DNA from: Lepidodermella squamata
Taxonomy: Eukaryota > Animalia > Gastrotricha
Assembly: GCA_047495785.1 (NCBI GenBank)
Contig: JBLDXI010000015.1
Location: forward strand, 992,001 to 1,056,000
Length of the DNA stretch: 64,000 nt
Direction of reading: 5' to 3'
The position numbers and the translations under genes are program-made. Shown piece after piece: positions 17,550 through 38,856 of the stretch; within the stretch, counting starts at the first letter, position 1, and every line of letters begins with the position of its first letter. A model generated the notes under the pieces. That model was not told the origin of the DNA. It saw nothing but the letters and a program-made list of their open reading frames with translations, and did not search any database.

Positions 17550-20500
17550 ATGAGTAAAAACTTGGAAAATTTGCCGCATCGCCTGTCGACGGATAGCGAG
17601 ACAAAAATCCGCGCGACCGGCTATAAATACGAGGCGGCACCCCTCGCCGTCATATCAACCAGCCCGTCGCTGGCAAGCAGCGTTGCCGATAACGCAAAAC
17701 CAAGCCCGCAACAGCGCGTGTCCGTTCACTCGAACAACTCGCCAACAACGCCCGAAAAACGGTACCACAACGTGAAAATAGCATCGGACGAAACTGTAGG
17801 CCTGTTGCCTGCTGTTGACGGCGATGATTCATCGTCGAAATGCCCGGCTGATGAGGACATGGTGGAGTCTACGTCGAAGGCTGCTTCGAAATGGCGGGCG
17901 CAGAATCGGCTGAAGAGCCTGCCGATAAGCCGGAATGTTATCAGTTTCAATAGCGAGAATTTGGATGAAAGTGACGGCGGGCATGAACGGCTGCTGGTCC
18001 TGCCCTCGACGCGGTCCTTACCTCTTCACCACAACGATAGCGCTAGCGAAATGGTAAGTGGAAAATTCTGGGTTTTTCTTTTAAATGTTGGAAAATTCGA
18101 GTAAAATTAATTGGAACCACATGCATTCGATGAGACCGAAGAGTTTAATGACCGAAAATTCACGAGATTGTCTGTGCAATTTATCTGGAAACCTTTCGTC
18201 ACTTGGACCTTTTCGCTGTTCGATCCTATTCATTTTCCCATTTAATATATTTTTCATGATTATTCCTCATTTTCGCAAATTTCTCAAGTAATTTTGGGGT
18301 TTTCTTTTTGGTGAATTTGTCGAAAGTTTTCATTTCAAATTTAGAATCTATTAGTACCTTTCCTTATTCTTAAGCAGGATCTTTTATTTTTAGGTTCCAG
18401 CATTAAATCAAAGCGTCATGGTTTTTTTCACTTTTCTCAGTTTTTTATTTTTGATCGATACTCTCTCGCTCTCCTTCTATGATTTCTTTTAGGTTTTTTT
18501 TCTCATCGGAGTATCCAGGTACCATCAGGTATAAGGTAGAAATGTTTTCAATACTGGTTTCCGAAATTTCCGATATCGAATAATCTCTGATTTCCGAAAT
18601 CGATACTTGGAAACGATATTCCACTGAAAAATGGCCGAAAATGAGGCTAAGAGCTCATTTCATTGAAAACTTTCAAGGAGCTTATAGGGGCCGCCAGGGT
18701 TAGCTGTCAAGGTACCCTGCTGTGGTGCAAAAGAAAGCTCTCTATCGGTTATATACAGGCTAAAAAGATATAATTAGACGCTATATAGGGGACGCTTGAA
18801 ATTTGAAACTCAAAAAGCTTACGGGATAATTACTGCGCTTTAACCCTAAATTAAGGGTGTCAATTTAGCATTATAGCGAATTTTTTTCTTTCGCGTTAGA
18901 AATCAAATACGGAAAAAATAGCATTTTCAGGCTTATTTTTCCTAATATTTTGAATTCTGAATTTCTAATTTCTAATTTTACCAATAATGGCTGAAAATGA
19001 CAATACTTCGACTTTTGCGGATAATTTTTTGTTCTACGTTCCAAAATCGCAGCATCGATTTTCACCGGTAATTAAAGAATTTTTATTATTCGTGATTTTT
19101 TCTCCAATTCAATCCTTATAATTATCGCTTCAAAAATAATCCGCAAAATTGTCCAAATCTAGGAAAATCTCTAATAAATCCGTAAATGTGCCATTTTTTA
19201 TCCATTGTTTATACCGATTAGAATAGGAGCGTAGGAATTTTCCGCTCTAGTTGTGCTGGCGATTTTTATTATACTCCCGTTTTATCAATTACAACATGTA
19301 TGTACAAACCTAGAATATTTCGCTTTTGTTCCAATAATAAAACTGACGGAATTAGACCAGCGGCGATTTTTACGATCTCCTTTACAACATTCGATATGCA
19401 AATGTAGAAACAATATAGCTGTACAAGTATATTGTTATTGCTCACCCTGCCCGCCGGCCGCTACTGTGTTTACGCGCATCATCCTTAACAATAAAATAAC
19501 AATAATAGTAATGATAGCAAAACAGTCAGATATATCAGCTGGTATGGTTCATTCACACCTGGTGGTTACAAATATATCGGTGTTGGAAAAATCATTTTTA
19601 CGCCAACATTATTCTCAAATTTCTCGTCTTTTGTCAACATAAAAATGTCTTTTTTTATTTTCCGTGCATATTATTTATTGTTATTTATCATCACGAGCTT
19701 TCAACGAAATGATTTCTGCTATTGTTATATTGAGAGGTCGCGACATAACCGCAATAACAACATTTGTAAAGTGATCCGTTATATATATCATATATATCAT
19801 AAATCATAATAATATATCATAAAAAATACGTAAAAAAATAGTGCGCGTGCGCGGGCCAAAAATATGCGCACGCGCGCGCGCGCGCTTTTTATTGCGTACA
19901 CTCTCGAAACGGTAACAACACGCGTCTACTTAATATACAATACTCATCTACCGGGGTACTTTTCGCTTTTCATCACTTGATGATTATGATAGGGCCCGGT
20001 TATACGCGCGTATAGTAGAGTCGATATCATCTCTCGCCACCCTCATATATATAGCCTCCGTATAAAAGCGCGCATCGTTGCTATATATAGCCCAAGTTGG
20101 TAGTAATGCACGCGAGATAGCCTTCGATTAGCCGCCCAACGGCTACATAACTGCTCGCTGCCAGTCACGAACGCCAGTTTAGCCACTTTCGGTCTAATAA
20201 AAACAAGCCAAACTAGGCGCTTAGCATAACAATGGAGGTAATAAAGCGTAGAGAGAACAAGAAGATAGATTACACGGCGTTTTTTCCTCCAGCCTACGAT
20301 GATTTTTTTCGCCGCCATCATGCGCGCCAGTCCTCTCCAGCCCATCAATAATTTGTTAATCTGAAAAATAGTGGCGTCCTTACAGGGACAAAGCGTGGCC
20401 TGACGTCACGAGCTTTCATCTCATAATAGCCCCTCGCGAGCTATGAGACTAGCAGGGTGCTCAGGGCACTTCTCACTATTGATTCCCATATTATATGTTG

Positions 20501-23500
20501 GAAAAACATCATCATTAATATCCGCTAAAATTACATGATGGCAGAAATTGTCCTCAGCCGCTGTTATATTTACATTTTTCACTCAAGATAAAAGTACAAC
20601 TGGACATTTGGTGTAAAATTTACGTAAATTCATTCGCATCTCGCCCGTCGACATGTTTCAAAATCCGGCGACGATTAACCAGATGTTCGCCAACCAGGTA
20701 TTTAATTTCATCATTTCCAGGCCGTTTAGCCGTTAGACAATTGCATATATGAAATAACTAGGTTTCCCTTTTATTTCTTTTCACACTGACTTGACTAATT
20801 CGAATAATTTTCCACTATTAGCACAATAAAGCTGACAGCCTGCTACCACAGGTAGTCTAGCGGTAATTATACCTCGCATAATTATCGTTCATCTATAAGC
20901 ATGTTTCTTAAATTATCGCGTGATGATACTTTTTCACCTGATTAAAGGCGCTATAACTAATGCAGGATTTAGCTACGCGTAGGGAATATATTTACCCCAT
21001 ATGTTTGCATAGATTGTTACTTCGTTAGATTGCTCTCATCGTAAGCTTTCAAATGACACCCAACTTGATATGGTTTCAAGCTATTTTTGATCGCGTCAAG
21101 TTGAAGCGCGCATCAAATAGTGCGTGACCTAATTTTGTAGTGCGCATCTTTTTATTACATACTGCAATAGCCATTTTTTATTACACCTTTTTATTACTAT
21201 AACCCGCTAATTATTTATAGGTCTACTTATTTTTTGACTGATGACCCCATTTAAATTAAAGCAATGAAGCTAACCTAATAACCGTAGTACTTGTTGACCT
21301 GAGGCTGATTACTACCGGTTGCTCGCCGAAATGAATGCGCCTACTGACCTCCATCAACACGTACCTTTGACTTCGATAATTCAAACCGCGCCTAATAATA
21401 ACCCGAACAGTAGCCCGTATTTGAGCAATCTTCAAAATAGACACGTGTTCTTGTCTAATAAACAGGAGGAGACGTCGGTATCCGGGCTCGGCGGCCAGCC
21501 GCAGTACTTCGAACCGGTTCGCGGCTCGGCGAGTCGCGCGTCTCGCGTCACAATACCCGGTATGCGAAATGCGTACGGCGAGGCCGGTTCGCAGCAAAAT
21601 GTCACCTTTGCGACGCATTCGCAAAGCGGTGGTGCAGGGTACGGCGCGCACTACATGCCGCCACATCAGAGCAGTCTTAGCGACTCAATAGGCGATAACT
21701 ATTACGACGCCTCACCGGCACCTCTTGAAAAAACCTATCATCAAATTAGTACAGAACAGGTAAATGAACGACTCGGTTACAGTAGAATGCTTGTGGTTCC
21801 AATTTGGTTCAAGAGTTTCATGTTCTCAGTTTGCTTTTCGACCTCTTTGGTTTTTTCGACCGACGCGTCTCCATAGCAACGGTTGCTAAGGAGATGTACT
21901 TGGACGCTATACCCTAGTAACCGAACATTCATAGATCATTGGTTGCTAGGGAAAAGCCTCCACTTGATTCCCATAGCTACCAATCACGTTGCTATGGAAA
22001 AGCGTCATTTTCCTTTCCTTAGTAACGCTTTGTATCACTATTCCAGAAATCGAGAGAAAGCGATGAAGCGCAGCAGCAACAAGCAGCTACGTTGATGAAG
22101 AACCTATCTATGTTCCTTGCCGCTTCCGGAGCAAGTTTGGGTGCCGCTCAAGCAAAACCGGCTTCAAGTAGTAGAGGTGCGCCCCATGACACCGAGAAAA
22201 CGAAACGCACGACCAAAACCTATGTCGAAGTTCGAGTTGTCTTTCTGAAAATCGGCGAAATCGATACGCTGAAAGAGGTGCGGTTATCAATTTGCTTTCG
22301 AAATTAGTAAATTTCTGTTTTTTTGTAGCAATATTCCGCAGATGTTTACATTCAGTCGAGATGGCGCGAGCCGACCCTCGATCAAAAATCCCCGGACGAG
22401 TTGAAGACGGTGGATTTCACCAAACTGTGGAGCCCGTGCCTATACATAGAAAACGCACTGTCCGAACAGAAAGATTCCAGCTGGCAGTCGGCAGCTCTCA
22501 ACGATCTCGGTGAAGCGTTTGTTTCGGAGCGCCGCAAACTGCGCGGCGTCTTCCTAGAAAACCTCGAGCTGCAAAACTTCCCCCTCGATGTGCAAGACCT
22601 GTCTGTTACGGTTGTGTCCGAGCGACCCGATTCCGATGTCGAGCTCATACCGGACGAGGAAGATCCGAGTTCGGTCAACATAGGCACGTTTGCCGACGAA
22701 CAGGAGTGGAAGCTCTACCAACACGTTGAAGTTACGAAAAAAACCGTCAAGGTCGAGTTCGCCAACCAGCAACGTCAGCATTCAGCCATTCAAGTTACTT
22801 GCCGGGCTGCTCGAAGGCCTGGTTATTTCTACTACAATGTTTTTCTTGTCATGGTGAGTAAAAACAGACGATTGCCTACGCAACCCCGAGGGACACTTTG
22901 CCGTAGCAACACGGGGCAGAAACGCACTCAACAATGTAGATATTAGATGATTGCATCTTGCATTTCGGGTCTGAAAGTTTAGGGAGGCTATGGAAACCCC
23001 AAAGGACGCCTTTTTATAGCATCGAGGCTCCTAAGCATTCTCAATGATGAGCGCCCCGGGTTCAAAATGCTCTCGTTGCTAAGGACAATCAAAAGAACGC
23101 CATTCCATAGCAACCAAGTTTTTAGGTACTCTTAACTTGGCTTGGGGTGGTAAATCTAAGCATATTGATTAAATAACATGCGGTTGCTAAGGAGAATGAT
23201 TAGACGCTTTATCATAGCAACAGATGATATTGCAGCTGAAAACTGACTTGTGGATTATTTTTTCCAGTTCTTCATCAGTTCCATCTCGTTCGGCACTTTC
23301 TCCGTCGACTGCAGCCTGCCGCAAAACCGGCTTCAGTTGTCATTCACCCTACTGCTGACTTCGATCGCGTTCAAAATGGTTATAAATCAAAGCTTGCCCA
23401 AAATTTCCTACCTGACGTACATGGACAAGTACGTGCTGATGTCGCTCGTCTTCCTCGTGCTCATATGCGTGTGGCACTCTATTGTGCCGTCGTTGTGTGC

Positions 23501-25459
23501 CTCTAAAGAAGACGATTCGTTCTACACGAACAAAACTGAGCTTTACGTCATACTTGGCTTCTTCCTGCTCTACCTTATCGGGCACATTCTATTCGCAGCC
23601 TTCGTCTACATCCACGCCTGGAAACGGCGCCTTCAAATGTCGCAGAAGGACCGCGAATTTCGAGTACGTTCCCATCTTCGCAAGCTTTGTCCAAAATAGA
23701 AGGGAGACCAGATAGAAAGCGAAAAATTGAAGACCAAAGAAGACAAAAACGCGCTTTGATTAATCAAATTTTATGTTGCTTTTTTTATTTTCAAATTTCC
23801 ACCACCCAACTGCCATTCCTAAAACCGCGCTGCTACCTTTTCAACCAACTAAGTTTCCGTAACCCATTGATTTTGAACAACTAACACTGCTGCTGTTTCA
23901 AACGACCCTGTGTTTCCACCCTTTCTGTATGAATCATTGTTCGGCTATATTATAGTTATACGTCGGTGCGAAGCTACTGCAACAAGTAGCGTCTATGAGT
24001 AAACGTAGACGCTAAATCGTTAACTGCTGTGTAGGAGATGGCTATATAAAATGGTAACACGTCGTGATGTGCCGCAATTTTAATTCATTAAAAAATCACT
24101 CGGTTGCCGAATGGATGGCCTACGTTTATTTTTTTGCGCCAATTTATCCACCTAATTTTTTTGTTTAATCAGACAATGACATTTTATAGCCGGTTAATGA
24201 CGCTCTTCTGATCAACAAATGCTTGGAAATAATTTTTCCGCATTGCGTTTAAATTTAGTTGCCATTTTTTTAAACAGTTGTTACGATGAATTTGGAAATA
24301 TTCAGCTTTGCTTATTAATCTCTAACAGGATCTATTTTGCAACATGAACAATTTTCAAAATTCAAAGGTGGGGCTAGATAGTCGAGGATAATCTGTAGAC
24401 CCCAATGATTGGCATGGTTTCATAATTAAATTTTTATAGGTGATAGGGTTATGCCGTTTCTAGAAAAACACTCATATGTAAAGAGAGTTAATGGCATTTG
24501 CAACTAAGTCCCCCCATTTTTGAACGCCTGCCCCCATTCACGCCACATGCATTAGATGTGGTGGGTCCATTTAAGGATAGCGAACCTGATCTTTTGGGTA
24601 GCGCATGTTAAGCGAAATACCCCTTCATTTTCAAAGATTCGAATTTTGAATCTTGATATGCTACATATTTTTGAAAATCATGTTATTTGCAAATTCGTAA
24701 AACTTTGGTTTTCAGGTTCCAAAGCCTGGGGCAAAATTGGGCGAATTTAACTGGAATTTTCTGGGGCTCGGCTTGCCATTATTATATTTCATCAGTTACC
24801 AAACAAACGAAGGCAATACAATGAAAACAGACCATGAAGTCTTTAATCGATTTCTTGAAACTTGGATTAAAATTTCCCGATAAATAATCCATAAGTTACA
24901 GAATCATCAAGTTTCAGGTTTTTCGGAGATTCTCAGCAATTCGTATTTTCTTTCGGTGACATTACAGGAGAAGAGTCGCTTTCGTTTCTTACGAATTTTT
25001 TTATTTAAAGCTAATAGCGAAAATTATGGAGCACGCTGTAATTGGGCTAAAGGAAGCATTTTTGTTTGAAACGTGATTTTTGTGACAGTGCTTTTTTAAC
25101 AGTCTTTTTTGAGCATTTTCTTGCCAAATTCGTCATTACAAACTTTTTACGCACAGGCACGGGCTGAATTTTACGGCGCTGGCACTTCAAGTCGGGACGC
25201 TGATCATCACCATTCGCAGCAAAAAAGCCATCACCATCAACAGCAGCATCATCACCATCAGCAACGCCACAGCAAAAACATCAGCAACGACCAGTATTCC
25301 GGCGCATCGGCAACTTCGGACACGTTGAAGGACATGAGCAGTAGGGCGCCGTTGACTGGCCTAGCTGCCTTGCAACAACTGCAACAGCCATCTCACCACT
25401 CGCCGCCTGCCTACGGCAATCCTATCAACAACAACCGGTCGCCGAGCAGGAGAAATTGA
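17550..25459 (+). CDS. Cys-less pentameric ligand-gated ion channel subunit 1 (exons 17550-18053 and/or 21331-21759; 22047-22277; 22329-22853; 23268-23663; 25157-25459)
   Basis: VEVRVVFLKIGEIDT, ADVYIQSRWREP, LWSPCLYIEN, Pro-loop LQNFPLDVQDL without cysteines, QEW, pre-M1 RAARRPG, four TM helices with LPKISYLTYMDKY. All junctions are phase 0 GT-AG; the 5' exons are less certain. Confidence 0.88.
21867..23221. promoter_or_regulatory. Intronic cluster of ~14 RFX/X-box-like motifs
   Basis: GTCTCCATAGCAAC at 21867 matches GTHNYYATRRNAAC exactly. GTTGCTA(A/G/T)GG or its complement recurs at 21882, 21909, 21942, 21967, 21988, 22014, 22871, 22897, 22984, 23075, 23101, 23183 and 23208. Confidence 0.65.
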
Positions 25460-26327
25460 GCGAAACTGCCAACTTCAGGTGCTTCTTACCGTTATAGCAG
25501 ACACACAGCCATTTACCTGGTGACAAGTGAAAATTGCGTTAGAGTTTAGGGCAATCGATCGCAATTAGAGGGCAATCGATCGCCCGCAGATCAAAGCTCA
25601 TTGTCAAAGGATTCTCGTTTTACAAGAGGCTTATAGGCTAGCAGGATTCTGGGGATTCTCTTCCAAAGATCGATTTCCTATAAAATTTTTAGGAGCGATT
25701 GTCTACTATCAATTTCGGAGCAGGAAAAGATTCAAACTTCAGCAAAGTTCGAAAGTAGGGAGTAGCAATTTGATGGCTAGTTCTGAGCATCTTTAAAATT
25801 TCACTTGCCACCGGGCATACTACTGCTTCTCTTGAGATATGAAAAAACACACAGCCGCTTCCGATTGTATGTACGATTATATATATTTTCTCTGTATATA
25901 TAGGATGTAAATATTCATGCTGTCAAATTGTTTATCATTGTGCCTGATTATTCATATTTGCATTGAGCTACTTAACCCTGTGTGCATGAAAGCGCTATTA
26001 CACCTGTGCAGTTCCAGTAGTTGTCGCTTTAGTGCCAGAGCTTTTCAATATTACTATTATTCGATATTATTATTATAATTGATGATATTTTTAAAAATTG
26101 AGCGCGCCGTTCATTATTAAAAACGTATGCGCTGATTCTCTGAAGGTTTCGGGCCGAATTAAATGATATTCTGCATACTTTTTGTATAATTGCGAATAAA
26201 ATCACGAATGAGAACTGCCCGAGTACTTCAAGGTCATTCTTTTCCTCAGACGGATTAATCAGCCTGATTAGTAATTAAAAATCGCGACTCAGTCCACTCC
26301 TCGGTCAGTTCGTGTAATTTGTCCGCT

Positions 26328-28544
26328 ATGTCCTTGATCGGAACTATGCTCAAGTCAAAATCGAACTTGATCGCACCTATAATTCCTGAAAATTTCGCAG
26401 CTGGTAGATCGGATACCGAAGCCGAAGGTAAGAGCCCCGCGCCAAGCAGTAAAAAATCACGCCGGAAAGGTGCTGCAGTGACGTCAGATAAAATTCGCCG
26501 GCCTTTCAAAACCATAATCGAAATTCGGGTGGTTTTCCTTAAAATTGGTGAAATCGACACCTTAAAAGAGGTTAGCCCTTATTTTTGTTTCGAGCCTTAT
26601 ATTTCAAAGCTCTTAACAGCAATATTCGGCTGATTTATTCATTCAATCTCGCTGGCGCGAACCGTCTCTTGACGGCAAAACTCAGGACGAAGTGAACCAA
26701 ATCGATCTGATGAAGCTGTGGTCCCCAAATCTTTACATCGAAAACATCTTACAGGAGCAGAAGGACTCTAGCATGCGAAGTGCGAGTGTTGACAGTGAAA
26801 GCGGCGAGGTTCATGTCACAGATCGCCGGAAACTTCGCGGCGTTTTCCTGGAGAACCTTGAACTCTACACTTTTCCGTTCGACATTCAGGATTTGTCGAT
26901 AACGATTGTTTCTGAACGAACGGAGAATGAAGTCGAGTTGGTTCTCGATGAGGAAGAACCGAGTTCTGTCTACGTCGGAGCCTTCGCCGATGCTCAGGAG
27001 TGGCTTTTGTACAGAAGGGTTGAAGTTATTAAGAAAAGCATCCAGATGGAAATGAGCTCGCAACAACGGCCTCAATCTGCCCTAACAGTCATGTGCCGAG
27101 CAGCTCGACGGCCTGGCTACTTCCTTTTCAATGTCTACCTCGTTTTAGTAAGTCAGGATTACCTGAATTAAGTTGATTATTCTGTTGATCCATTTAGTTT
27201 TTCATCGGATCCGTGTCATTTGGTACCTTCCAAATCGACTGTAGCCTACCGCAAAATCGGCTCGCCCTTAGCTTCACACTGCTTCTCACCTCGATCGCTT
27301 TCAAAATGGTCATTAATCAAAGCCTGCCTAAAATTTCTTATCTGACCTATCTGGACAAGTATGTACTCACATCCTTGGTTTTCCTTGTTTCGCTCATCAC
27401 TTGGCATTCGTTCGTTCCGTCGTTGCTCGAGAATGATGCGGATGCGGCAAGGTTTGAGGCCGCCGTAGAGATTTACGTGCTGATAGGGTTCGGCGGGCTC
27501 TTCGTGGCCGGTCATTTGTTATTTGCGGCTTTCGTCTACTTCACAGTTTGGCAGAAACGGATTAGAATGGCTGCGTTGGATAAAGAATTCGAGGTAAGCT
27601 GTGTTGAAGTTATAAACACCAAAAATGGTAATCATCACTGCTATGCGATTGCAAGGAAACAGAATTTTAAATTCAGTTCAAATTCTGAAAAGTATAAGTA
27701 CTATCGGATTTGTTCACAATTAGTGTTGATCAATTTTGAGGAAAATCGTAGAGAATGAATCCAAAATGCTGTTGACAGTGGTGGGGTCCGAATTCCGCCC
27801 ATAGCTTCGCGCTCGAGCCGCTTTGAAACATGCCCGTATGCAGTGTTTACTGTGAATTTAACAAATTCGATAGATTCACGCTTCACCGCACACGGGCCGG
27901 CCAAGGTGTTGGTCTAAGCTCGGAGGAGAACAATGGGACCCAGCGCTATTGTTCAGCCGGGCACGGGTCTCTGGAATTGGGCCGCCGGGCTTGGGCCTCC
28001 TACAACAAACGCCCTACCCAATAGCTGTATGAAGTCCCAGCCAACAGCCGGCAGCCCGAGAGCAGCTCGAGCCCCAACAAAAGCAATAGCGAAATGAAGT
28101 ATCATGCCTGATGTGACATCTCGGAACTCGGAAGAACCCGAAAACTCAAAAGAATTGCTTTAGGGCCAATGTGATATCAAACGACCTAATTTTCCGATAG
28201 TTTTGGGGAAGAAAACCAATTTTATCCTTATCGAAAATGCTCAATTTTCGCCTATTTCGGGGTTTTGCTAATAGATTTGCCACTTGTCATACTTTTCACC
28301 GCAGAAGTTTTCTGTTGAATATTTCCGCAACGACTTTCTCATTATATCTTCGCCAAATGCAAAGCTTTTGAAATTTTGTTAGGCTCATCAACGTCCATCA
28401 ACTCGGCGCGAAAGCCTTCGATCGAACATGTCGGCCCCGGTGGCAACCACCGTCAGCAGCGTGAACATAATGATGAACGACGGCGAAACGCAATTGGGCC
28501 GCCCACTACGTGATATTGTACCGTCAACCATAGCGAGCGAATGA
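26328..28544 (+). CDS. Cys-less pLGIC subunit 2 (26328-26570; 26620-27147; 27198-27593; 28383-28544)
   Basis: Same motifs (LYTFPFDIQDL; DCSLPQNRLALSFTLLLT) and intron positions as subunit 1. Confidence 0.9.
27786..28080. mobile_element. Partial copy of the 975-1551 foldback element in intron 3 of subunit 2
   Basis: Shares AATTTAACAAATTC.ATAGATTCACGCTTCAC with the arms, and the spacer in reverse orientation (CCTACAAC.AACGCCCTAC…GAAGTCCCAGC). Confidence 0.75.
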
Positions 28545-28775: not shown

Positions 28776-31321
28776 ATGAAAGACTGGGGTGAGCTAATGC
28801 AAGCAGCGGGTGTTGCCGGTCTTGTTTCACCCATCGGCATGCTTCGCAATAAAATGCGAACCAACCATGCTGCTAACGGATCTCGCCGTGGCTTTTTCCT
28901 GCCTATCGATGAAAAGGCTAAACGAGAGGCGAAAACAACTGTCGAGATTCGTGTGACCTTCCTAAAAATCGGGGAAATCGATACTTTGAAAGAGGTAATA
29001 ACTCCTAAGAATTTTCGACCTTCAACATTCTACAATCTTGATTTCCAAGCAATACTCGGCCGACGTTTTCATTCAAGCTCGATGGCGAGAGCCACTTTTG
29101 GATGGGAAAACCGAGCAAGAGCTGAATTCAATCAACTTCACCCAGTTATGGTCACCGTCGCTTTACATCGAGAACGTTCTCTCGGAACAGAAGGACTCCA
29201 CCTGGCAAATGGCGGCTCTTGACGAGCAGGATGAAGCATATGTAATCGAGCGGCGTAAAGTTCGAGCTTCGTTCCTCGAAAACCTCGAACTGCAAAACTT
29301 CCCGTTCGACGTACAAGACTTGTCGATTACAATAGTCTCTGAGCGAATTTCCGATGAAGTTGAGCTGGTTGAGGATGAAGCTGATCCTAGTTCGGTCTAC
29401 GTCGGGTCTTTTGCCGACGAACAGGAGTGGAAGTTGTACCAGCATGTGGATGTTACGACGAAGATGGTTCAGATTGATATCGGCTCGCAGCAACGAAAGC
29501 ATTCGGCAGTTCAAGTTACGTGCAGGGCAGCTCGCAGGACGGGCTACTTCTTCTACAACGTATTTCCCGTTTTGGTGGGTGATACGCTAGATTAACTGCA
29601 AAGCCTATACGGAGTTATTTAAAACTTTGTAGAAGGGTGTTAGGGGGATATCAAACTTCAAGAAGTGATTTGTCTTGCATGGTCTTGCATGGTGAAGTGC
29701 ATGGTTACAACCGAAAATTATACACAATATATTTGTTAAGGTTTTCAGTTGTCACTAATTGCCGACATATCTCTTACAGCTGAAATGTGGCTGTGTGGAG
29801 GAGTTGTTTCCCAAGATTCGAGATTTTCAGGACTCATCCTCTTCGGTTCACATGAATTAGATATAAATTTTCCATTAGCCATTAGATTAGCCATTTCGCA
29901 ACCATTTTTTAGAACCCTGCTAAATAGTGATTTCAACCAAGTTGATTCAGGGACCATAGATAACAGAGGTCACTACAGTCTCTCTGTCCGGGACAATATT
30001 TTTTCACATTTCACGTTCATTTAAAAATATAACAACTGAAACATTGTCAATATTAATACGCAAATATCCCGATTTATTTGTCAGAAAAAAATCAACTTAG
30101 TACAGCAAATGCATCTCGGGTCTTATTGATTTCTATCAAGAAGGAATTGCTGCATTGCATGTTTTCATCTTTTTGAAGTTCGGTTCAACGGATGGCAGTT
30201 ACGCTGGGGGATTTTTCGATAAAAATAGGAGCATTGCTCCTTAGAGAATAGTTCTTAGAATGGTCTCTATTATGATAATGTATTATGTACCATTTTATTT
30301 TTATACCTATATATTACTCGTTTGACCTATTTAAATTTTCCCGCTTTCCCGTCACATGCATGGCGGGCCATATAAAAGCTATCAGACCAGTGCAGACTTT
30401 TTGGAATAAGGCTCACTTTTGGCCTTATGTGGCGAAGTAATTTGCGGTGAGACGATGGGCAAGAAAAGTCACCGTTTTTACTTACTTTTCTGATGGAATA
30501 GAGTGACACCAAAAGTGCCATGTTTCCCGACTGGCGACTAGTGCCAACTCAAATCTCCACTCGCCAACAATCAAACCATTCGAATCCTCTTGTTACCTAG
30601 CATTTAGAATTAGATAATTAGTCTAGGATTCGCTGATGAAAATGCGACTTATTTTCTGAATCTGAAATATGAAATTGATATACTTCTTGTAGTTCTTCAT
30701 CTGTGCTGTGTCATTCGGCACCTTCCAAATCGAATGTACCTTACCGCAAAACCGCCTGCAGCTGACGTTCACGCTGCTGCTAACATCAATCGCCTTCAAG
30801 ATGGTCATCAATCAAAACCTTCCGAAAATCTCCTACCTAACCTACATGGACGTCTACGTCCTGTTGTCACTGCTCTTCCTCGTCCTCATGTGTGCTTGGC
30901 ATTCGATAGTTCCCATGATTTCTACTTTGCACGATAACAACCCTGAAGTTATGTTCGCTATTGAAGTCGCTGCAGTCACTGGATTTTTGGCCGTCTACGT
31001 TCTGGCCCATGTCGTTTTTGGTGCAATTGTCTACGTCAAAGCCTGGCGACGTAGGTTGGCAATGAGTCAGAAAGACAAAATTCTCAAGGTTTTAGCATTT
31101 TCACCCACATTTTACGGCTGAATTATGAGATTTTTTTCTAGACAAGGGCGCAACTTGAAATGGTGCTAGCTGATGGCGTTACGAGCATTTCAAAACGGCA
31201 TCGAGCAAGTCAAAAGGGGAAGCAGTCTATCAGTTTCACCATTGCTTCTATGAATGACGAAGACGCTTGCAGTCACGCTTCCTCGCATCACGCGCTTCAC
31301 AGTGTTATGGTTGCCGCATGA
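28776..31321 (+). CDS. Cys-less pLGIC subunit 3 (28776-28994; 29050-29574; 30693-31088; 31142-31321)
   Basis: LQNFPFDVQDL, ECTLPQNRLQLTFTLLLT; conserved phase-0 introns. Confidence 0.9.
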
Positions 31322-31738: not shown

Positions 31739-33818
31739 ATGACGACGACTAATGTAAAATATTCGCTGGCGAACATGAGTGCGCTGGCGCAGGTCGCTAG
31801 ATCACTGGCTCCTATTGGCTTGGCACAGCGAAAGCTCACACCCAGACCTACTAGCATTGGCCCGAGACCTTCGAGCGCTGGACGCCGCGCAAGTTTCATG
31901 GCTGGGGAGCGAATGAAACGGAACATTAAAACTGTTGTCAGCATACGCGTTGTTTTCCTGAAAATCGGTGAAATCGATACTCTGAAAGAGGTAAGCTCCC
32001 TTCCAATCTGCAAATTAAGGGGAATACTCCTCAAATTACTGGGCGTTGTACAAATTTATTCTCTAAAATCACATTGAAATTAAAAAATTCAAACTGTACA
32101 GTTTTCGAGGTTAAAATAATTCCTGTGTTCCCATTACACTATTCAGCCTACTTCTTATTTTTCAGCAATATTCCGCTGATATCTATATCCAATCCCGTTG
32201 GAGAGAGCCACTTCTCGATGGCAAACCCGAGGCCGAGTTGCAGATAGCCGACTACCCACGATTATGGAACCCAAATCTGTATTGCGAGAACGTTTTATCG
32301 GAGCAAAAAGACAGCTCGTGGCACGTCGGTGTTTTGGACGAGCGAGGCGAGGCTTATGTCATCGAACGGCGTAAATTGCGTGGGACATTTTTCGAGAATC
32401 TCGAGCTGCAAAATTTTCCGTTCGACGTGCAAGACTTGTCGGTGAGCGTTGTCTCGGAGAAGGAGACCAGCGAGGTGGAACTTGTGCCGGATGACGATGA
32501 GCCGAGTTCGGTCTACGTCGGCGCGTTTGCTGACGAGCAGGAATGGCGGTTGTACGAGCATGTTGAAACGGCGAACAAAACGGTTAGCGTCGAGCTAGGC
32601 AGCGATAACAAGCAGCATTCCGGTATTCAAGTGACTTGCAGAGCTGCGCGGAGACCCGGTTATTTCTACTACAACATTTTCCCAGTTTTGGTAAGCTATA
32701 ACTTTTAGCTCGATGATAAATTTGCGGCGTTTCGAAAATTAAATGGAAAGTCAGATGATGCGGACGGGAGCCGAGGAGAACTAACATTGGAACCAAAAGC
32801 TAAAATATCCTACTTTCAATATGTTGATGGTTTATCGTACTAAGATTTGGGCTTAAGAAGTTCCAGTGCTGAATTTTAGCATTCTGCCTCTATATAACCT
32901 AGCCTTTGGTCCCTTCAACTTTTACTCACCTATATCTCTTAATAAGATATGATTTGATTTGGAGCCTAAATCCTTCAATCAATAATGTCCCACTTTTAGG
33001 AGACTATATCTATCAATTCAAATCACCGACTGTGATAAAGCATAAAAGATCCTTGGAATTGGAGTTTCCTAACAGAGTGAAGAGTGATCATAACATTCAG
33101 GTGTGGATAATATTTTGGATCAACGGGATTTTGGGGTTTGTTGAGTGCCACATTATTTGCCCTTGGGAACTGAATATTGAGACATTTTCAAGCCTAATTT
33201 TACCGCTTTATCTTTCAGTTTTTCATTTGCGCCGTTTCTTTCGGAACCTTTCAAATCGACAGCGCATTGCCACAAAACCGGCTTCAGCTAACCTTCACCC
33301 TGTTGCTGACTTCAATCGCCTTCAAAATGGTCATCAACCAAGCTCTGCCTAAAATATCCTACCTTACCTACATGGATATTTACGTGTTAATGTCTCTACT
33401 ATTTCTTGTGCTATTATGCGCCTGGCACTCGATAGTTCCTATGCTAACGTTCTTCAAAGGCAGTATCTTATTCGACCCTACAAATGTTGAAATCTACGTA
33501 GTTCTAGGATTTTTCCTGCTATTCCTATTCGGTCATTTGCTCTTCGTCGTTGCTGTATATAATCGAGCGTTTAAACGGCGTCTTTTGATGGCGCATAAGG
33601 ATCGAGATTACAAAAAGTCCGTCTCAGAACTGCAATGTGTCGTCGTTGATCCAGCTTCACAAGCTGATGGCGGGAAAGGACGGCGATCAAGCCGCTTCAA
33701 AACCGTCAACAGCCGCTTTTTGTCGAGCATTCAGGCTGATACTAGCGACGAAGGTCTTGCAACTGTGCACAGTGTAGCTTCTAACATGGCCATGCATAAT
33801 GCCGTATTTGGAAATTAG
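31739..33818 (+). CDS. Cys-less pLGIC subunit 4 (31739-31990; 32166-32690; 33219-33818)
   Basis: LQNFPFDVQDL, DSALPQNRLQLTF; lacks the post-M4 intron. Confidence 0.9.
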
Positions 33819-33962: not shown

Positions 33963-35687
33963 ATGCAAAATCCACCATCGGAAAATCCTGCTACTTCACC
34001 ATGGGGTCTGCTGCCCTTGTCTCCGGTCACTAAAGGGGCCCATCCGCCTCCTCCAACTCCAAGCAGGTCAGAAAGTGCTGACCTGAGATCACCGTCAGGG
34101 CTAGCTAAGCGCCACCTAACCCCTCTCGAGCTGTCGAAACGCTCTGGGAAAACATTGGTCGAGGTTCGAGTCGTATTTTTCAAACTAGGCGAAATCGACA
34201 CTGTTAAGGAGGTTTGAAAAACGCCTCTTTCCATCAAATCCGTGATATTTTGTATATCTATAGCAATTTTCTGCTGATATTTTAATTCAAACTCGGTGGC
34301 GAGAGCCGCTGCTGGATCAAAGGACTGAGTTCGATATCGAAGGATGTGATTTATCAAAGCTATGGAGCCCTCTCCTCTATATTGAAAACGCGTTGGTTGA
34401 GAGTAAGGATACCAGCTCGAAATCGGCGGCTGTCGACGAATCTGGAGCTGCTTGGGTTTTCGAACAGCGTAAAGTGCGTGGCAACTACCTGGAAAATCTC
34501 GAACTACAAGACTTCCCATTCGACGTTCAAGATCTCTCGGTGACCGTTGTATCAGAGAGGCCTGATACGGAGGTAGAGCTAATTCCGGATGCTGAAGACC
34601 CAAGTTCTATCTACGTCGGCGCATTTGCGGACGAACAGGAGTGGAGGCTGTACAAACATGTCGAGGTTCAGCGAAAATTCGTGAAGATCGAGCATGGCAG
34701 GCGGAAGAGGCAACATTCGGCCCTTCAAGTTACGTGTAGAGCCGCCCGGAGGCCTGGCTTCTTTTTCTACAACGTTTTCTTCGTGTTGGTGAGTAAATCT
34801 ATTGCAGACAGTTGTAGGCTACTTTCGAATTTATGTCTAAGGTATGTAGGTGGGGATGTTTCAACCCCTCGACGAGTTTCCATAAGAAGCTTGCTCTGTT
34901 TCTCCACCGATGTGCATATTTAGGCTGATTTAAACTTCCAGTCTCTCGAATTTTAACAAATTTGTGTCTAAGGTATGCACAAATGTATCGAAGGAGTAAT
35001 ATACGAGCGTTTTTCATTGCGTTGTCGGGTACATTATGTCCCTTGTGGTCTCCATTCTCCAATGATCTAGGAATTACTGAATTAGTCTAACGTATGAATC
35101 GGGTAATATCTGCGTTACGCAGCCTTTTTTAAATCTCCTTCCATCTATTTATTGTGATAACTTCTTCTTTCCAGTTTCTAATCACTTTCGCATCATTCGG
35201 CACATTTTCAGTTGATTGCAGCTTGCCTCAGAATCGGCTTCAGCTGAGTTTCACAACCATGCTAATCTTAGTGGCGTTCAAGATCGCCGTTAACCAATCG
35301 CTTCCAAAGATCTCTTATCTCACTTATACCGACGCTTACGTGCTCGCTTCCTTATGTTACATCGTCCTGTTATGTGTTTGGCACACGATAGCTTCCCAAA
35401 TTTGTCCCATCGAAAGGTTGCACTCGGCAAATGTCGACGTGGAGGTTTACGTTGTAGTAGCCTTTGCGGCGTTCTACATACTCTGGCATGCTGTTTTCGC
35501 CCTCGTCGTCTACACTCGAGCATGGCCTCGGAGGAACTTCATGGCTTTAAGGGAGCATGAGCTATTTCAGGCAAGTTTTTTACGGCAAGCCCATCAACTC
35601 ATTTTTGCTTATTCTTCTTTTATCAAGGATGGCTCTTCAATAGCATCTTCACCCTTCAGCGTTGTATCTGCGGATTTGAAGTATTGA
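33963..35687 (+). CDS. Cys-less pLGIC subunit 5 (33963-34211; 34264-34788; 35175-35570; 35628-35687)
   Basis: LQDFPFDVQDL, DCSLPQNRLQLSFTTML; the last intron is probably GC-AG. Confidence 0.88.
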
Positions 35688-35817: not shown

Positions 35818-38800
35818 ATGCTAAAAAATAAGATTTCACAGCGAAAAATGTTCTGGCGGTGCTTTTCGAAGCGACAAGTAGCGCCGAGTAAGGCGGAAAG
35901 CGTGGCTCGAAGCCAGCCATCAATGCGACATTTCGCCGCCAGAATCGACTCACTACTTGAACGAACCCGGCGTCCTACAACCACAGTAGTCGATGTTAGG
36001 GTGGTTTTTCTGAAAATAGGCGAAATCGACACTCAAAAAGAGGTTTTTGTTCGACAATATGAAACCTGCCCTATCGATCTCAATTTTTATCCCTAGACTT
36101 TTTCCGCCGATGTTTTCATACAGGCCCGTTGGAGGGAGCCTGTACTCGACGGGCGAAGTCCTGCTTCCTTGGAATCCATCGATTTGTCCCAACTTTGGAA
36201 CCCGTCTCTTTACATTGAAAACGCAATGTCCGAGCAAAAGGAGAGCAAATGGCTAACTGCAGCTGCCGATGAACAAGGCCATGTATTCGTCTTCGAGCAG
36301 CGAAAATTGCGTGGTCTATTTTTCGAAAATCTTGAACTCGAGAATTTCCCGTTCGACGTGCAGGATCTTTCGATTACAGTCGCCTCAGAACGCCCCGTGC
36401 GAGAGGTGGAAATTGAGCCTAATACTGAAGAGCCTAGTTCGGTGTATGTTGGCGCGTTTGCGGATGAAAATGAGTGGAGATTGTACCAGCATGTTGAGGT
36501 GTCGTTTAAGACGATAACCTCGCAGCATAAGCAGCTGAAATCGAGGCACTCTGCCCTGCAAGCGACTTGCAAAGCTGCTAGACGGCCTGGATATTTCTTC
36601 TTCAATATTTTCCCAGTTTTGGTAAATTTAGGACATGTCCTTTCCAGTCAATCTAAGCTGTTTGCGTGAACATGAAAATTCTCCAGATGCATAAAGGATA
36701 TTTCATTTGGGGTTTCTATAATATGAATTCCGATGAAATCGTATAACTCCCAGAAAAAATGTGCCTTCAAAAAATCGTATCCGCTTAAAAGCATGATTAA
36801 ATCCCAAATTTGTATGGAAAATCAATTCAACCGAAAAATATGAACTAGAAGGGAATTAAATGTTGTAGAAAATCCGGATCTTCTAGCTTTAAAAATAATT
36901 TTTGAACCTCGAACGGGAAGTTATTGCCCGCACTCGGCGATTTGTCTGCGATTTAGGCTTTGGCATGAAAAGCCGATATATCGATTTCAAATATCGATTT
37001 CACAAATCACGGATTTTTTCAACATTTAATATCTTTGAAACCAATTGCTGACAAATTTTCGATCGAAAAGAAAAAAAGCCGAAATCGAAACGAAATCTTA
37101 GAAAATGTGGGCTGGAACCTGAGTAATATTTCGCTAAATTATGGATAAATTCCAATAATAAATTTGAACTATCTTGGGTACGTTACCCAGCTCTGATTGG
37201 TCAAACTCAATATTTATATCTCATTATTCGGCAATCTTTCCCCTGTTAGTTCGATTTCTTCGAAAATTCAAACATTCGGAAAGGCTATTATTTTCAATTT
37301 TTCGAATATATCTTTCAATTTTAACGTCGAGTTCAATTTCGTTTCAATTTTCTTGCTTTTCAAGTTTTTGAATATCTTGAAAAAAATATTAGCAATTTTA
37401 TTCAAATTTTCAACCACTCAGAACTTGAAATTCTAAGAATCATAAAAAATTATGATAATTTAATATTTTTAATATTGTGAATATTGTAATTTTTCTTTCA
37501 GTTTTCGATAACAGTCGTTTCATTCGCGACATTCGCCGTCGATTGCGAACTGCCGCAGTCGCGCCTGCAACTCGTCATGATCCTCATGATGATATCGGTG
37601 ACCTTCAAAACGCTCATCAACGCCAACATGCCGCACGTCGACTACATGACGTACATGGACAAGTACGTTCACATGTCCATGATTTTTCTCGTGTTACTCG
37701 GCGCCTGGCATGCGATTGCGGCTAAAATCTGCGTCGAAGGCCACGACACTGATGCGACCGGCGCGTTGTTGGGCAAATTTTCCGAGGGCCTCGTCGTAGC
37801 CGGGTTTCTTGCTGTTCACATCACCGCCCACGTAGCTTACGTCATTTCGGTTTATCGCAACGCGTGGCGCCGTCGCTATGAGGCAACCAAGAAAGATAAG
37901 GTATTCTACCCCAGCTTAACTTAGACTGGAATCGAACAAAAACCGAAAAAAGTAAAAAAAATGGAATTTAAAATTTCAATAATTTTTTGAAAGCTTTATG
38001 TGTGATTCATATTCCTGCAAAATTGTGGGCGTTGGAAAACCTATAAATACGTTTTTAGGTGAAAAATTTTGCAGAACTATACCTAAGGTTCCGCTAAAAT
38101 TAAGAATCAAAACGAAACTGCTAAAATCTCCAATCAAACAAATTCGTCCACACAATAATAATTCCCAGCTATCATAAAAACAATTTCAGGCTGTTTTAGA
38201 TCGAAAATATATCAAAATTTAATATTAATTTTCGAAAGTTTTACTTCTCCATTTACCTTGAAGGAAATTTTTCAAAATAAGATAAATATTGACAAATTCC
38301 TTAAGCAAATTTCAAATTCCGCTATAAATGTCGGCTTTATTTTTAAATGATGAAATTTCAGCAAACCAAAACTTTTTCCAGCGAAATTCTTTAATTTTAA
38401 ACTTGGCCATTTAGGAACAAATATCCGCGCCTCGGGCGAATGGTATTTTGGCTACGTTAGAAAAATTCTGGAATTCAAGGCAACTGGTACGATTTTACGT
38501 GAATCTAGAAAATTCCGGAAAATTAATAGTTACTTGAATAAGAACTATAAGAACAGTGAAATTAGAACTCCTATTTCGATATTACATGGCTAACAAATTG
38601 AAATTCGAATATTTCGATAACAATTACCAAAATTTACTCGGCGATATAGCAAAAATCTCTTGAAAATAATATTACGAAAATTACGAAAAACCGCACATCG
38701 CGATCGAATTTTCGTTTCCCGAGAAGGATTTCTTCAAGATCAAAGACTCAATCTTTCTGAAACTTGCTAAATAAATATTCTCAATCTATTTTTCAGCGAC

Positions 38801-38856
38801 TCAGAGGACGAGCGGACTCGACTGTATCCTACGCCAGCAGTGTAACTACTACTTGA
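35818..38856 (+). CDS. Cys-less pLGIC subunit 6 (35818-36042; 36097-36621; 37502-37900; probable 38415-38486 and 38797-38856)
   Basis: LENFPFDVQDL, DCELPQSRLQL, MPHVDYMTYMDKY. The 3' exons are inferred from phase-0 AG/GT sites; read-through to a stop at 37924 is the alternative. Confidence 0.82.

What the first reader, a model, noticed from the sequence alone, without database searches (positions are those of the whole stretch)
17550..38856. Tandem array of six Cys-less (Pro-loop) pLGIC subunit genes in an animal
Seen: six intact head-to-tail paralogues with FPxDxQ but no flanking cysteines, prokaryote-like short M3-M4 loops and shared phase-0 introns. Established: Cys-less pLGICs occur in prokaryotes (GLIC, ELIC), protists and scattered invertebrates, and the animal members are largely uncharacterised. 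Inference: a local expansion that could supply combinatorial heteropentamers or a sensory receptor repertoire.
Basis: partly seen in the sequence, partly recalled or inferred. Interest (0 to 1): 0.82.

Follow-up and report, generated by a model that had tools for sequence, protein, structure and literature searches.

The report
Six tandem Cys-less pentameric channel genes
Six intact neighbouring genes encode subunits of a known but uncharacterised invertebrate branch of the neurotransmitter-receptor channel superfamily, and their sequences suggest that this branch sits in the membrane upside down, with its 'ligand-binding' domain inside the cell.

Summary
Six head-to-tail + strand genes (CDS 21331-37924, not 17550-38856) encode pLGIC-like subunits. 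All six have FP[FL]D[VI]Q, Glu and Leu in place of the two Cys-loop cysteines, 12-20-residue M3-M4 loops, and two phase-0 GT-AG introns at identical positions. All reading frames are intact. Synonymous sites are saturated and non-synonymous change is low, so the copies are old and under selection.

They belong to the metazoan 'Cys-less Pro-loop' clade already described (Jaiteh 2016; Johnson 2023), in the subfamily that holds the schistosome members. They form one lineage-specific clade. This is not a recent cysteine loss inside GABA/Gly receptors: the family profile scores ELIC and GABA-A gamma2 equally.

The new point concerns the whole family. Members lack a signal peptide, many have long disordered N-termini, and all carry a conserved Lys/Arg-rich tail after M4. 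Most LBDs have no N-glycosylation sequon, and flatworm M3-M4 loops are sequon-rich. Bacterial relatives, scored with the same detectors, show the opposite pattern. I infer an inverted topology with a cytoplasmic LBD, at about 0.6 probability. It is untested, and I found no mention of it in the searchable literature.

Earlier scan notes on this genome concern other pLGIC families.

The parts
21331..23699 (+). Gene 1. Exons 21331-21759, 22047-22277, 22329-22853 and 23268-23699 (including the stop); 538 aa as modelled. It is the least diverged copy.
   Evidence: The exon-0 motifs AYGEAGS and NYYDAS match orthologue P0159 and the annelid and nemertean members. All splice sites are GT-AG and phase 0. 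Its end branch is 0.059, against 0.36-0.82 for the other five. A GTACGT donor directly after ...KDREFR (around 23666) leaves a further 3' exon possible.
25109..27758 (+). Gene 2. Core exons 26328-26570 (start uncertain), 26620-27147 and 27198-27758. A probable upstream His/Gln-rich exon lies within 25109-25459.
   Evidence: The upstream ORF carries an EFYGAG motif like AYGEAGS in gene 1 and EFYGAAS at the start of the second gene on L007. No ATG precedes that motif, so the 5' end is unresolved.
28776..31121 (+). Gene 3. Exons 28776-28994, 29050-29574 and 30693-31121; 390 aa.
   Evidence: Exon B gives the best Pfam LBD hit, E 1.1e-8.
31739..33818 (+). Gene 4. Exons 31739-31990, 32166-32690 and 33219-33818; 458 aa.
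   Evidence: It pairs with its neighbour gene 3 in the tree.
33963..35687 (+). Gene 5. Exons 33963-34211, 34264-34788 and 35175-35687; 428 aa.
   Evidence: It pairs with its neighbour gene 6 in the tree.
35818..37924 (+). Gene 6. Exons 35818-36042, 36097-36621 and 37502-37924; 390 aa. It is the most diverged copy, with an altered M2 (Ile at 6', Met at 9').
   Evidence: Its end branch is 0.82.
17550..18104 (+). It is not supported as part of it.
   Evidence: There is no Pfam family, no Atlas relative with a score above 0.64, no tblastn hit from family proteins, and no similarity to L001 or L007.
21867..22001 (.). A cluster of X-box-like (RFX) motifs in the first intron of gene 1, with another at 23208-23221 in its last intron.
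   Evidence: The pattern GTHNYYATRRNAAC gives one exact match at 21867 and one-mismatch sites at 21967, 21988 and 23208. The window total is 20 against 10.9 expected, and 2 of 100 shuffles reach 20. This is suggestive only.

Best explanation
The locus is an old, lineage-specific tandem expansion of one orthogroup of the metazoan 'primary Cys-less' pLGIC family. Each gene encodes a subunit built as follows:
- a disordered N-terminal region, followed by a short helix;
- a ten-strand beta-sandwich homologous to the pLGIC ligand-binding domain, with an FPFD Pro-loop but no disulfide;
- four membrane helices, with 6' Thr and 9' Leu in M2 in five of the six copies;
- a very short M3-M4 loop;
- a conserved Lys/Arg-rich helix after M4.

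Five subunits should assemble around an M2-lined pore. Gating should pass through the beta1-beta2 loop, Pro-loop, pre-M1 and M2-M3 interface, which is the best-conserved part among the six copies. Loop C, the classical agonist-site lid, is the most variable part, so the paralogues probably differ in what they bind or in how they pair.

My favoured reading of orientation is inverted relative to every characterised pLGIC. The N-terminal region, the beta-sandwich and the C-terminal tail would be cytoplasmic, and the M1-M2 and M3-M4 loops extracellular or luminal. The channel would then be gated from the cytoplasmic side, by an intracellular ligand or ion or by a tethered partner.

Shown: the gene structure, intactness, selection, family placement, the fold (on an orthologue), and the sequence features. 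Inferred: pentamer formation, conduction, and orientation.

Rough confidences: the array is real and belongs to this family, above 0.95; it forms a pentameric channel, about 0.8; it has a cytoplasmic LBD, about 0.6-0.65.
For: Structure and selection:
- establish the six gene models.
- pN is 0.20-0.34 against a saturated pS of 0.73-0.84.
- Region identities among the six copies: Pro-loop 88%, beta1-beta2 78%, pre-M1 76%, M2-M3 73%, loop C 23%, M3-M4 loop 14%.

Family placement:
- The profile search finds 1338 representatives at E<=1e-3. The top hits are Pinctada, Schistosoma (including A0A5K4EMP5, named in PMC9874803 as a Cys-less LGIC), Opisthorchis and Macrostomum.
- Further relatives come from annelids, nemerteans, molluscs and rotifers.
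- In the tree, the six genes plus metagenomic orthologues form a clade with support 100, sister (98) to the flatworm plus annelid/nemertean subfamily.

Fold:
- The AF2 model of the Capitella orthologue has pLDDT 87.8 and pTM 0.80, with a confident helix after M4.
- Foldseek matches GABA-A beta3 with target-normalised TM 0.75.

Orientation:
1. Only 3 of 86 members have any hydrophobic 10-residue stretch before beta1. Of 59 members with at least 45 N-terminal residues, 1 reaches a 9-residue KD of 2.0 (median 0.78); 29 more have fewer than 45 residues before beta1.
2. Three transcript contigs and one intron-poor genomic orthologue have in-frame stops upstream of the ATG.
3. The post-M4 tail has a median length of 49 aa, with 8.2 K+R in the first 25 residues. 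K+R totals 12.2 on the LBD side against 3.6 on the other, in 46 of 49 members.
4. Of 76 distinct LBDs, 50 have no N-x-S/T sequon, and none is conserved. Four of the six window LBDs have none, and there is one conserved unpaired Cys.
5. Flatworm M3-M4 loops carry 39 sequons against 23 expected, plus C-x7-C pairs, whereas their LBDs carry 1 against 6 expected.
6. Control: 38 bacterial relatives fetched with the same profile. 35 of 38 have an N-terminal hydrophobic stretch (median KD 3.01), the tail after M4 has a median length of 0 aa, and K+R is 1.47 on the LBD side against 4.09 on the other.
Against: - There are no expression data.
- There is no experimental topology, assembly or current for any member of the family.
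- The structure model is of an orthologue 52-54% identical to the window genes, not of a window protein. Spliced window proteins cannot be passed by reference.
- The 5' ends of genes 2-6 and the 3' end of gene 1 are not fixed, so an unseen first exon cannot be formally excluded for the window copies themselves.
- The pre-M1 arginines are also present in canonical receptors, so that part of the charge count does not discriminate.
- The positive-inside rule is weaker in eukaryotes than in bacteria.
- LBD sequons fall below the shuffle expectation rather than matching it, which a purely cytosolic domain does not predict.
- One family member (P0127) has an N-terminal TM-like segment.
- Gene 6 has a hydrophobic, atypical M2 and may not conduct on its own.
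Confidence: 0.6

Rival explanations
1. Same family and same channel function, but the canonical orientation. The beta-sandwich is extracellular and binds an external transmitter or sensory cue. The domain would get across the membrane without a cleavable signal peptide, either through M1 acting as a reverse signal-anchor or through a 5' exon that has been systematically missed.
For: Every characterised pLGIC has an extracellular or periplasmic LBD (established knowledge). The fold and the gating-interface motifs are conserved. Loop C varies among the paralogues as it does in receptors with different agonists. According to PMC9874803, planarian homologues are expressed in mechanosensory neurons and their knock-down gives sensory and movement defects, which fits a surface receptor. 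One member (P0127) does have an N-terminal hydrophobic segment.
Against: The region ahead of M1 is 190 to more than 800 residues long, with no hydrophobic segment in 83 of 86 members. ORFs closed by upstream stops rule out a missed exon in four cases. The 30-150-residue Lys/Arg-rich tail would have to be exported. Most LBDs have no sequon, while flatworm M3-M4 loops are sequon-rich. The same detectors give the canonical pattern in bacterial relatives.
Confidence: 0.3
2. The genes are recent 'secondary' Cys-less derivatives of canonical anionic Cys-loop receptors (GABA-A, GlyR or GluCl type), like nematode lgc-34 and the Dirofilaria subunit.
For: The best single-sequence PDB hit is GABA-A gamma2, though only at E 0.02. 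The top Foldseek hits are GABA-A beta3. The M2-M3 motif SLPKISY resembles that of anionic receptors. Some database names read 'GABA receptor gamma-like' or 'glycine receptor'.
Against: The family profile scores bacterial ELIC (1.3e-27) as well as GABA-A gamma2 (2.4e-27). The Cys positions carry a polar and a hydrophobic residue, as in prokaryotes (PMC4795631). The window LBDs hold only 1-2 cysteines, so there is no second, loop-C cysteine pair. There is no PAR motif before M2. The genes group with the schistosome clade that PMC9874803 separates from GluCl and nAChR clades. PMC4795631 places the lophotrochozoan Cys-less clade with protist sequences, outside the Cys-loop clades.
Confidence: 0.03
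3. Most copies are non-functional relics, or proteins that no longer conduct ions, for example scaffolds that keep the fold.
For: Transcription is unverified. Gene 6 has Ile at 6' and Met at 9' in M2, and genes 2-6 sit on long branches.
Against: All six reading frames and all twelve core splice sites are intact although synonymous sites are saturated. The gating-interface motifs are 73-88% identical among the copies. The tandem arrangement is kept in two related organisms.
Confidence: 0.05

Closest known systems
Flatworm 'Cys-less' LGICs (Schistosoma Smp_336620, Smp_334630, Smp_135040; UniProt A0A5K4EMP5; planarian gabrg3L-type genes) and the lophotrochozoan Cys-less Pro-loop clade of Jaiteh et al. 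2016
   Same: They fall in the same subfamily in the tree. They share the Pro-loop without cysteines, the absence of a loop-C cysteine pair, the SLPKISYLTY M2-M3 motif, the basic [KR]RRR-x-M-x-x-KD-x-E-[YF] tail, and the absence of a signal peptide.
   Different: The window genes have very short M3-M4 loops (12-20 aa), against 60-170 aa sequon-rich loops in flukes. They have Gln and Asn at M2 -2' and -1', rather than the acidic residue stressed in PMC9874803. They form a six-gene tandem array. Orientation was not discussed in either paper.
ELIC and GLIC (prokaryotic pLGICs)
   Same: They are Cys-less, with a polar and a hydrophobic residue at the Cys positions, a short M3-M4 loop and an LPK-x-[PS]-Y M2-M3 motif. 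ELIC is the best PDB sequence match to the family profile.
   Different: The bacterial relatives have N-terminal signal peptides, end at M4, and have the opposite K+R bias. Identity is only 21-33%. The window genes have spliceosomal introns.
GABA-A, GlyR and GluCl anionic Cys-loop receptors
   Same: They share the overall fold (target-normalised TM about 0.75), the FPxD motif, the pre-M1 Arg, and 6' Thr and 9' Leu.
   Different: The window genes have no Cys-loop disulfide, signal peptide, long cytoplasmic M3-M4 domain or PAR selectivity motif. Sequence similarity is only at the level of E 0.02 for a single sequence.
Channels gated from the cytoplasmic side (CNG/HCN, IP3 and ryanodine receptors), and the inverted pore of ionotropic glutamate receptors relative to K+ channels. 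These are functional analogies recalled from general knowledge.
   Same: If the inferred orientation is right, the sensor domain faces the cytoplasm, as in these channels. The iGluR pore shows that a channel module can be flipped in the course of evolution.
   Different: They are unrelated folds. This is an analogy only, and nothing here was tested.

Membership tests
pLGIC (Pro-loop receptor) superfamily | Beta-sandwich N-terminal domain followed by four membrane helices, the pLGIC fold | tested here: met
   Pfam PF02931 and PF02932 hit the window exons, weakly. The AF2 model of the orthologue P0160 has pLDDT 87.8. Foldseek matches GABA-A beta3 with target-normalised TM 0.75 and E 7e-22.
pLGIC (Pro-loop receptor) superfamily | Pro-loop [FY]PxD motif, conserved pre-M1 Arg, and M2-M3 loop Pro | tested here: met
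   FP[FL]D[VI]Q, RAARRxG[YF]F and [LM]P[KH][IV][SD]Y are present in all six genes and invariant or nearly so across 49 family members.
pLGIC (Pro-loop receptor) superfamily | Pentameric assembly around an M2-lined pore with a 9' Leu gate | not testable with these tools
   6' Thr and 9' Leu are present in genes 1-5; gene 6 has Ile and Met. Assembly and conduction need experiments.
Canonical metazoan Cys-loop receptors | Two cysteines 13 residues apart flanking the Pro-loop | tested here: not met
   Glu and Leu align with the two cysteines of GABA-A gamma2. No Cys flanks the loop in any of the six genes.
Canonical metazoan Cys-loop receptors | Cleavable signal peptide and an extracellular, usually N-glycosylated, ligand-binding domain | tested here: not met
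   There is no hydrophobic N-terminal stretch in the window genes or in 83 of 86 relatives. Upstream stops close the ORF in four cases. Of 76 LBDs, 50 have no sequon. The actual location of the domain is inferred, not measured.
Canonical metazoan Cys-loop receptors | Long cytoplasmic M3-M4 domain and a short extracellular C-terminus | tested here: not met
   The M3-M4 loop is 12-20 aa in the window genes. A basic tail of 30 to more than 100 aa follows M4.
Metazoan primary Cys-less Pro-loop clade (Jaiteh 2016; Johnson 2023) | Groups phylogenetically with the lophotrochozoan and flatworm Cys-less sequences, apart from the canonical clades | tested here: met
   The window clade is sister, with support 98, to the subfamily containing S. 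mansoni A0A5K4EMP5 (P0009). ELIC and GABA-A score equally against the family profile. Canonical sequences could not be put in the tree.
Metazoan primary Cys-less Pro-loop clade (Jaiteh 2016; Johnson 2023) | No second (loop-C) cysteine pair | tested here: met
   Each window LBD has 1-2 cysteines. The only conserved one is the single Cys before M1.
Metazoan primary Cys-less Pro-loop clade (Jaiteh 2016; Johnson 2023) | Acidic residue at M2 -1' or -2', described as frequent in PMC9874803 | tested here: not met
   The window genes read LPQ[NS]R, with Gln at -2' and Asn or Ser at -1'. The nearest acidic residue lies 6-7 positions before the 0' Arg. This is a common feature of the clade, not a defining one.
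Prokaryotic pLGICs (GLIC/ELIC type) | Sec signal peptide, periplasmic LBD, and a protein that ends at M4 | tested here: not met
   38 bacterial relatives show these features. The window genes and their family do not.

The most novel reading that the evidence does not exclude
A whole, widespread branch of the pLGIC superfamily is inserted 'inside-out'. The branch includes the six genes of this array and hundreds of members in molluscs, annelids, nemerteans, flatworms and rotifers. Under this reading the homologue of the neurotransmitter-binding domain and both termini are cytoplasmic, and the M3-M4 loop is exposed outside or in a lumen and is glycosylated in flukes. These would be the first pLGICs gated from the cytoplasmic side, by an intracellular messenger or ion or by a tether through the long disordered N-terminus. 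According to the planarian literature, and possibly the X-box-like sites in gene 1, they would act in ciliated mechanosensory neurons.
Probability: 0.55. Interest if true: 0.88.

Novelty: new member of a known kind. Interest (0 to 1): 0.6.

Why it matters
As a gene array, this adds one more lineage-specific expansion to a family that has been catalogued twice but never characterised. That is useful for annotation but not surprising.

The family-level observation matters more. For fifty years pLGICs have been understood as sensors of extracellular or periplasmic ligands. A large animal clade that faces the other way would:
- open a new functional class, pLGICs gated from the cytoplasm;
- explain why the disulfide and the glycosylation sites are absent;
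- change how these proteins should be de-orphanised, using inside-out patches and intracellular ligands rather than bath-applied transmitters;
- change how the schistosome members are judged as drug targets, since the exposed epitope would be the M3-M4 loop and not the 'ligand-binding' domain.

The claim can be tested directly with standard topology assays.

Tried and rejected
Transcription and splice junctions remain unverified.

2. Organism identity. A search with the neighbouring HSP70 gave about 75-80% identity to animals of many phyla and was uninformative. The nearest relatives of the channel genes are unnamed metagenome contigs. The host is an animal. Every named relative of these genes is spiralian, but the host's phylum is unresolved.

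3. The ORF at 17550-18104 as the first exon. It was rejected for lack of any support.

4. Cytosolic domains in the long N-terminal extensions, as a topology marker. Pfam finds none.

5. A further 3' exon of gene 1 encoding the LDFLAKRKEW-type tail of annelid orthologues. None was found by motif search, and a donor site leaves the question open.

6. Quantitative dN/dS. This is not possible because synonymous sites are saturated.

7. A tree including canonical Cys-loop receptors. No canonical sequences were available by reference, so I relied on profile E-values and on the published trees.

8. Literature on orientation. Four searches found no mention of a missing signal peptide or an inverted topology in this family. 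The library lacks most subscription journals, including Ross et al. 2018, which I cite only through PMC9874803 and PMC8602322.

9. HGT or contamination. This was rejected. The genes have spliceosomal introns, lie next to an animal HSP70, and bacterial relatives are at most 33% identical.

Full report
**What is there**

The region holds six head-to-tail units on the + strand. The repeat finder gives six in-register copies of three exon-sized segments at 60-77% DNA identity. tblastn with fourteen family proteins hits these six units and nothing else in the window.

I built gene models from the conserved reading frames and splice sites. Every unit has the same three-part core:
- Exon A ends in ...GEIDT[LVQ]KE.
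- Exon B is 175-176 codons long and runs from [QT][YF]SAD... to ...N[VI][FY]x-V-[LM].
- Exon C starts at F[FLS]I... and runs to the stop.

All twelve junctions are GT-AG and phase 0, at identical codon positions. Intron 1 is 49-175 nt and intron 2 is 50-1118 nt.

Gene 1 has one more 5' exon (21331-21759). Its AYGEAGS and NYYDAS motifs recur in the metagenomic orthologue P0159 and in annelid and nemertean relatives. Gene 2 probably has a homologous His/Gln-rich upstream exon near 25109-25459. No copy has a stop or frameshift.

The coding array spans 21331-37924.

**Are they Cys-less pLGIC subunits?**

Yes. The evidence is:
- Pfam Neur_chan_LBD and Neur_chan_memb match the exons only weakly.
- All six genes carry NFP[FL]D[VI]QDL, RAARRxG[YF]F before M1 and [LM]P[KH][IV][SD]Y after M2.
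- In the HMMER alignment to GABA-A gamma2, the two Cys-loop cysteines face Glu and Leu. This is the polar/hydrophobic pattern that Jaiteh et al. describe for prokaryotic and primary Cys-less sequences (PMC4795631).
- The M3-M4 loop is 12-20 residues.
- An AF2 model of the Capitella orthologue P0160 has pLDDT 87.8 and pTM 0.80. The model matches GABA-A beta3 with target-normalised TM 0.75.

**Which family?**

A profile of the six exon-B peptides finds 1338 cluster representatives at E<=1e-3, of which 83 are at or below 1e-30.
- Named top hits are from Pinctada, Schistosoma, Opisthorchis and Macrostomum. One is S. mansoni A0A5K4EMP5, which Johnson et al. cite as a 'Cys-less' LGIC (PMC9874803).
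- A second search adds Capitella, Owenia, Lineus, Tubulanus, Octopus, Biomphalaria, Mytilus, Adineta and Rotaria.
- More distant members that could be named are again spiralian.

In a maximum-likelihood tree of 61 members:
- The six window genes plus three sequences from metagenome contigs form a clade with support 100.
- This clade is sister (98) to the subfamily holding the fluke sequences and the Owenia, Lineus and Capitella sequences.
- Gene 1 has a very short branch (0.059). Genes 2-6 form their own clade (97) with longer branches, and neighbours pair up (3 with 4, 5 with 6), as expected from tandem duplication.

The family profile scores ELIC (1.3e-27) and GABA-A gamma2 (2.4e-27) equally. 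These genes are therefore not a recent cysteine loss inside the anionic receptors. They belong to the deep Cys-less clade that PMC4795631 places with protist sequences.

**Age and selection**

- Amino-acid identity among the copies is 47-63%.
- Synonymous differences are saturated (pS 0.73-0.84), while pN is 0.20-0.34.
- The duplications are therefore old and the copies have been kept by purifying selection. A numerical dN/dS cannot be given.
- Conservation is highest at the gating interface: Pro-loop 88%, beta1-beta2 78%, pre-M1 76% and M2-M3 73%.
- It is lowest in loop C (23%) and the M3-M4 loop (14%).
- Two metagenome contigs from related organisms carry the orthologue of gene 1 followed by a second family gene, with different intron content. 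The tandem arrangement therefore predates this species.

**The unexpected feature: orientation**

None of the six predicted proteins begins with a signal peptide, and this holds for the whole family.

*Signal peptide:*
- Among 86 members that start with Met, only 3 have any 10-residue window of mean hydropathy 2.2 or more ahead of strand beta1.
- One of the three is a transposon-fused model and one has the stretch at residue 134.
- Of 59 members with at least 45 residues ahead of beta1, the median best 9-residue hydropathy in the first 40 residues is 0.78. Only one, a poly-Ala stretch, reaches 2.0.
- Another 29 members have fewer than 45 residues before beta1. These include RefSeq or NCBI models from Mytilus and Adineta that start 12-27 residues before it.
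- Three transcript contigs (L002, L003, L004) and an intron-poor genomic orthologue of gene 1 (L007) have in-frame stops just upstream of the ATG.
- Many members instead have long disordered N-termini, up to 670 residues.

*Post-M4 tail and charge:*
- After M4 every member carries a conserved [KR]RRR-x-M-x-x-KD-x-E-[YF] segment.
- The tail has a median length of 49 residues, with 8.2 Lys+Arg in its first 25. AF2 predicts it as a confident helix.
- Lys+Arg totals 12.2 on the side of the beta-sandwich and 3.6 on the other side, in 46 of 49 members. Without the pre-M1 arginines, which canonical receptors share, the figures are 9.0 and 3.6.

*Glycosylation sites and cysteines:*
- Of 76 distinct beta-sandwich domains, 50 have no N-x-S/T sequon at all, and none is conserved.
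- Four of the six window domains have none. The only conserved cysteine is a single unpaired one.
- Flukes have long M3-M4 loops, and these carry 39 sequons against 23 expected from composition. They also have Ser/Thr-rich stretches and C-x7-C pairs.
- The beta-sandwich domains of the same proteins carry 1 sequon against 6 expected.

*Control:*
- I fetched 38 bacterial relatives with the same family profile.
- The same detectors find an N-terminal hydrophobic stretch in 35 of 38 (median 3.01) and no residues after M4 (median 0).
- They give the opposite charge bias, 1.5 on the LBD side against 4.1 on the other, in 30 of 34.

It is established that a long, foldable N-terminal region without a signal sequence stays in the cytosol, and that Lys/Arg-rich flanks stay cytoplasmic. 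Together these results point to an N-in/C-in topology. The homologue of the ligand-binding domain would be cytoplasmic, and the M1-M2 and M3-M4 loops would lie on the far side.

I put this at about 0.6. It is an inference from sequence. The weak points are the unfixed 5' ends of genes 2-6, the weaker charge rule in eukaryotes, sequon counts that fall below the shuffle expectation rather than matching it, and one family member (P0127) with an N-terminal TM-like segment.

Four full-text searches found no paper that mentions a missing signal peptide or an inverted orientation for these proteins. The two papers that define the clade do not discuss it.

**Likely mechanism**

Five subunits would form an M2-lined pore.
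- Genes 1-5 keep 6' Thr and 9' Leu. Gene 6 has Ile and Met and may need partners.
- Charge selectivity cannot be read from the sequence. The window genes have Gln at M2 -2' and Asn (Ser in gene 6) at -1', neither the PAR nor the GEK motif.
- Gating should use the conserved beta1-beta2, Pro-loop, pre-M1 and M2-M3 interface.
- The variable loop C suggests that the paralogues differ in ligand or in interface.

If the orientation is inverted, the stimulus comes from the cytoplasm: a messenger, an ion, or a mechanical or protein tether through the N-terminal region.

According to PMC9874803 (citing Ross et al. 2018) and PMC8602322, planarian homologues (gabrg3L-type) mark putative mechanosensory neurons, and their knock-down causes seizure-like movement and sensory defects. 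I could not check that those planarian genes fall in this subfamily.

An earlier scan note (s1-374262) flagged X-box-like sites in gene 1. I find one exact and three one-mismatch matches clustered in its introns. The window-wide excess is modest, 20 against 10.9 expected.

**Verdict**

The array is a new member of a known, uncharacterised family, and it is an old expansion rather than a fast-evolving sensory repertoire.

The main value of the follow-up is the family-wide, testable inference of an inverted membrane orientation.

Noticed in passing
window 6863-8673: A dense cluster of nine tRNA genes (Val, Glu, Met, Thr, Arg, Ser, Ala, Val, Met), eight of them on the - strand. It lies inside the stretch that another note describes as GT15 mannosyltransferase genes.
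   Followed up: no
window 21867-22001 and 23208-23221: X-box-like (RFX) motifs clustered in the introns of gene 1, with one exact match to GTHNYYATRRNAAC. The window total is 20 against 10.9 expected. This fits the reported expression of planarian homologues in ciliated mechanosensory neurons, but it is weak on its own.
   Followed up: partly
window 39048-41069 (- strand): An HSP70/HSC70 gene lies directly downstream of the array. Its 673-aa ORF contains a short hydrophobic in-frame insert after ...HWPFKV that looks like an unspliced small intron. The best database identities are only about 75-80%, across many phyla.
   Followed up: partly
L001 (ENA ERZ27333047) and L007 (ENA ERZ23486787): Metagenome contigs from related organisms carry the same tandem arrangement but differ in intron content. 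The L001 gene lacks intron 1. The L007 orthologue is continuous from its N-terminus to M1. The second gene on L001 lacks intron 2 but has another intron. This indicates intron gain or loss within the clade.
   Followed up: partly
L042 (contig CBDHHR010000831.1, labelled a Metamycoplasmataceae MAG): A 96-residue stretch is 54% identical to the animal family, far above the 21-33% of true bacterial relatives. It is probably an animal contig binned into a bacterial MAG.
   Followed up: no
P0001 (Pinctada imbricata KAK3086155.1): This is the top-scoring database 'relative'. It is a gene model that fuses a retrotransposon endonuclease and reverse-transcriptase region to two truncated copies of the channel, which looks like an annotation artefact.
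   Followed up: no
P0009, P0007, P0010, P0013 and P0033 (fluke and other flatworm members): Their M3-M4 loops are 60-170 aa long, Ser/Thr-rich and full of N-x-S/T sequons, and several have a C-x7-C pair. This is unlike the cytoplasmic M3-M4 domains of canonical receptors.
   Followed up: yes
P0127 (unnamed representative, 454 aa): This is the only family member seen with an N-terminal TM-like segment (residues about 21-42) ahead of the beta-sandwich. It is either a different topology or a mis-predicted first exon.
   Followed up: no
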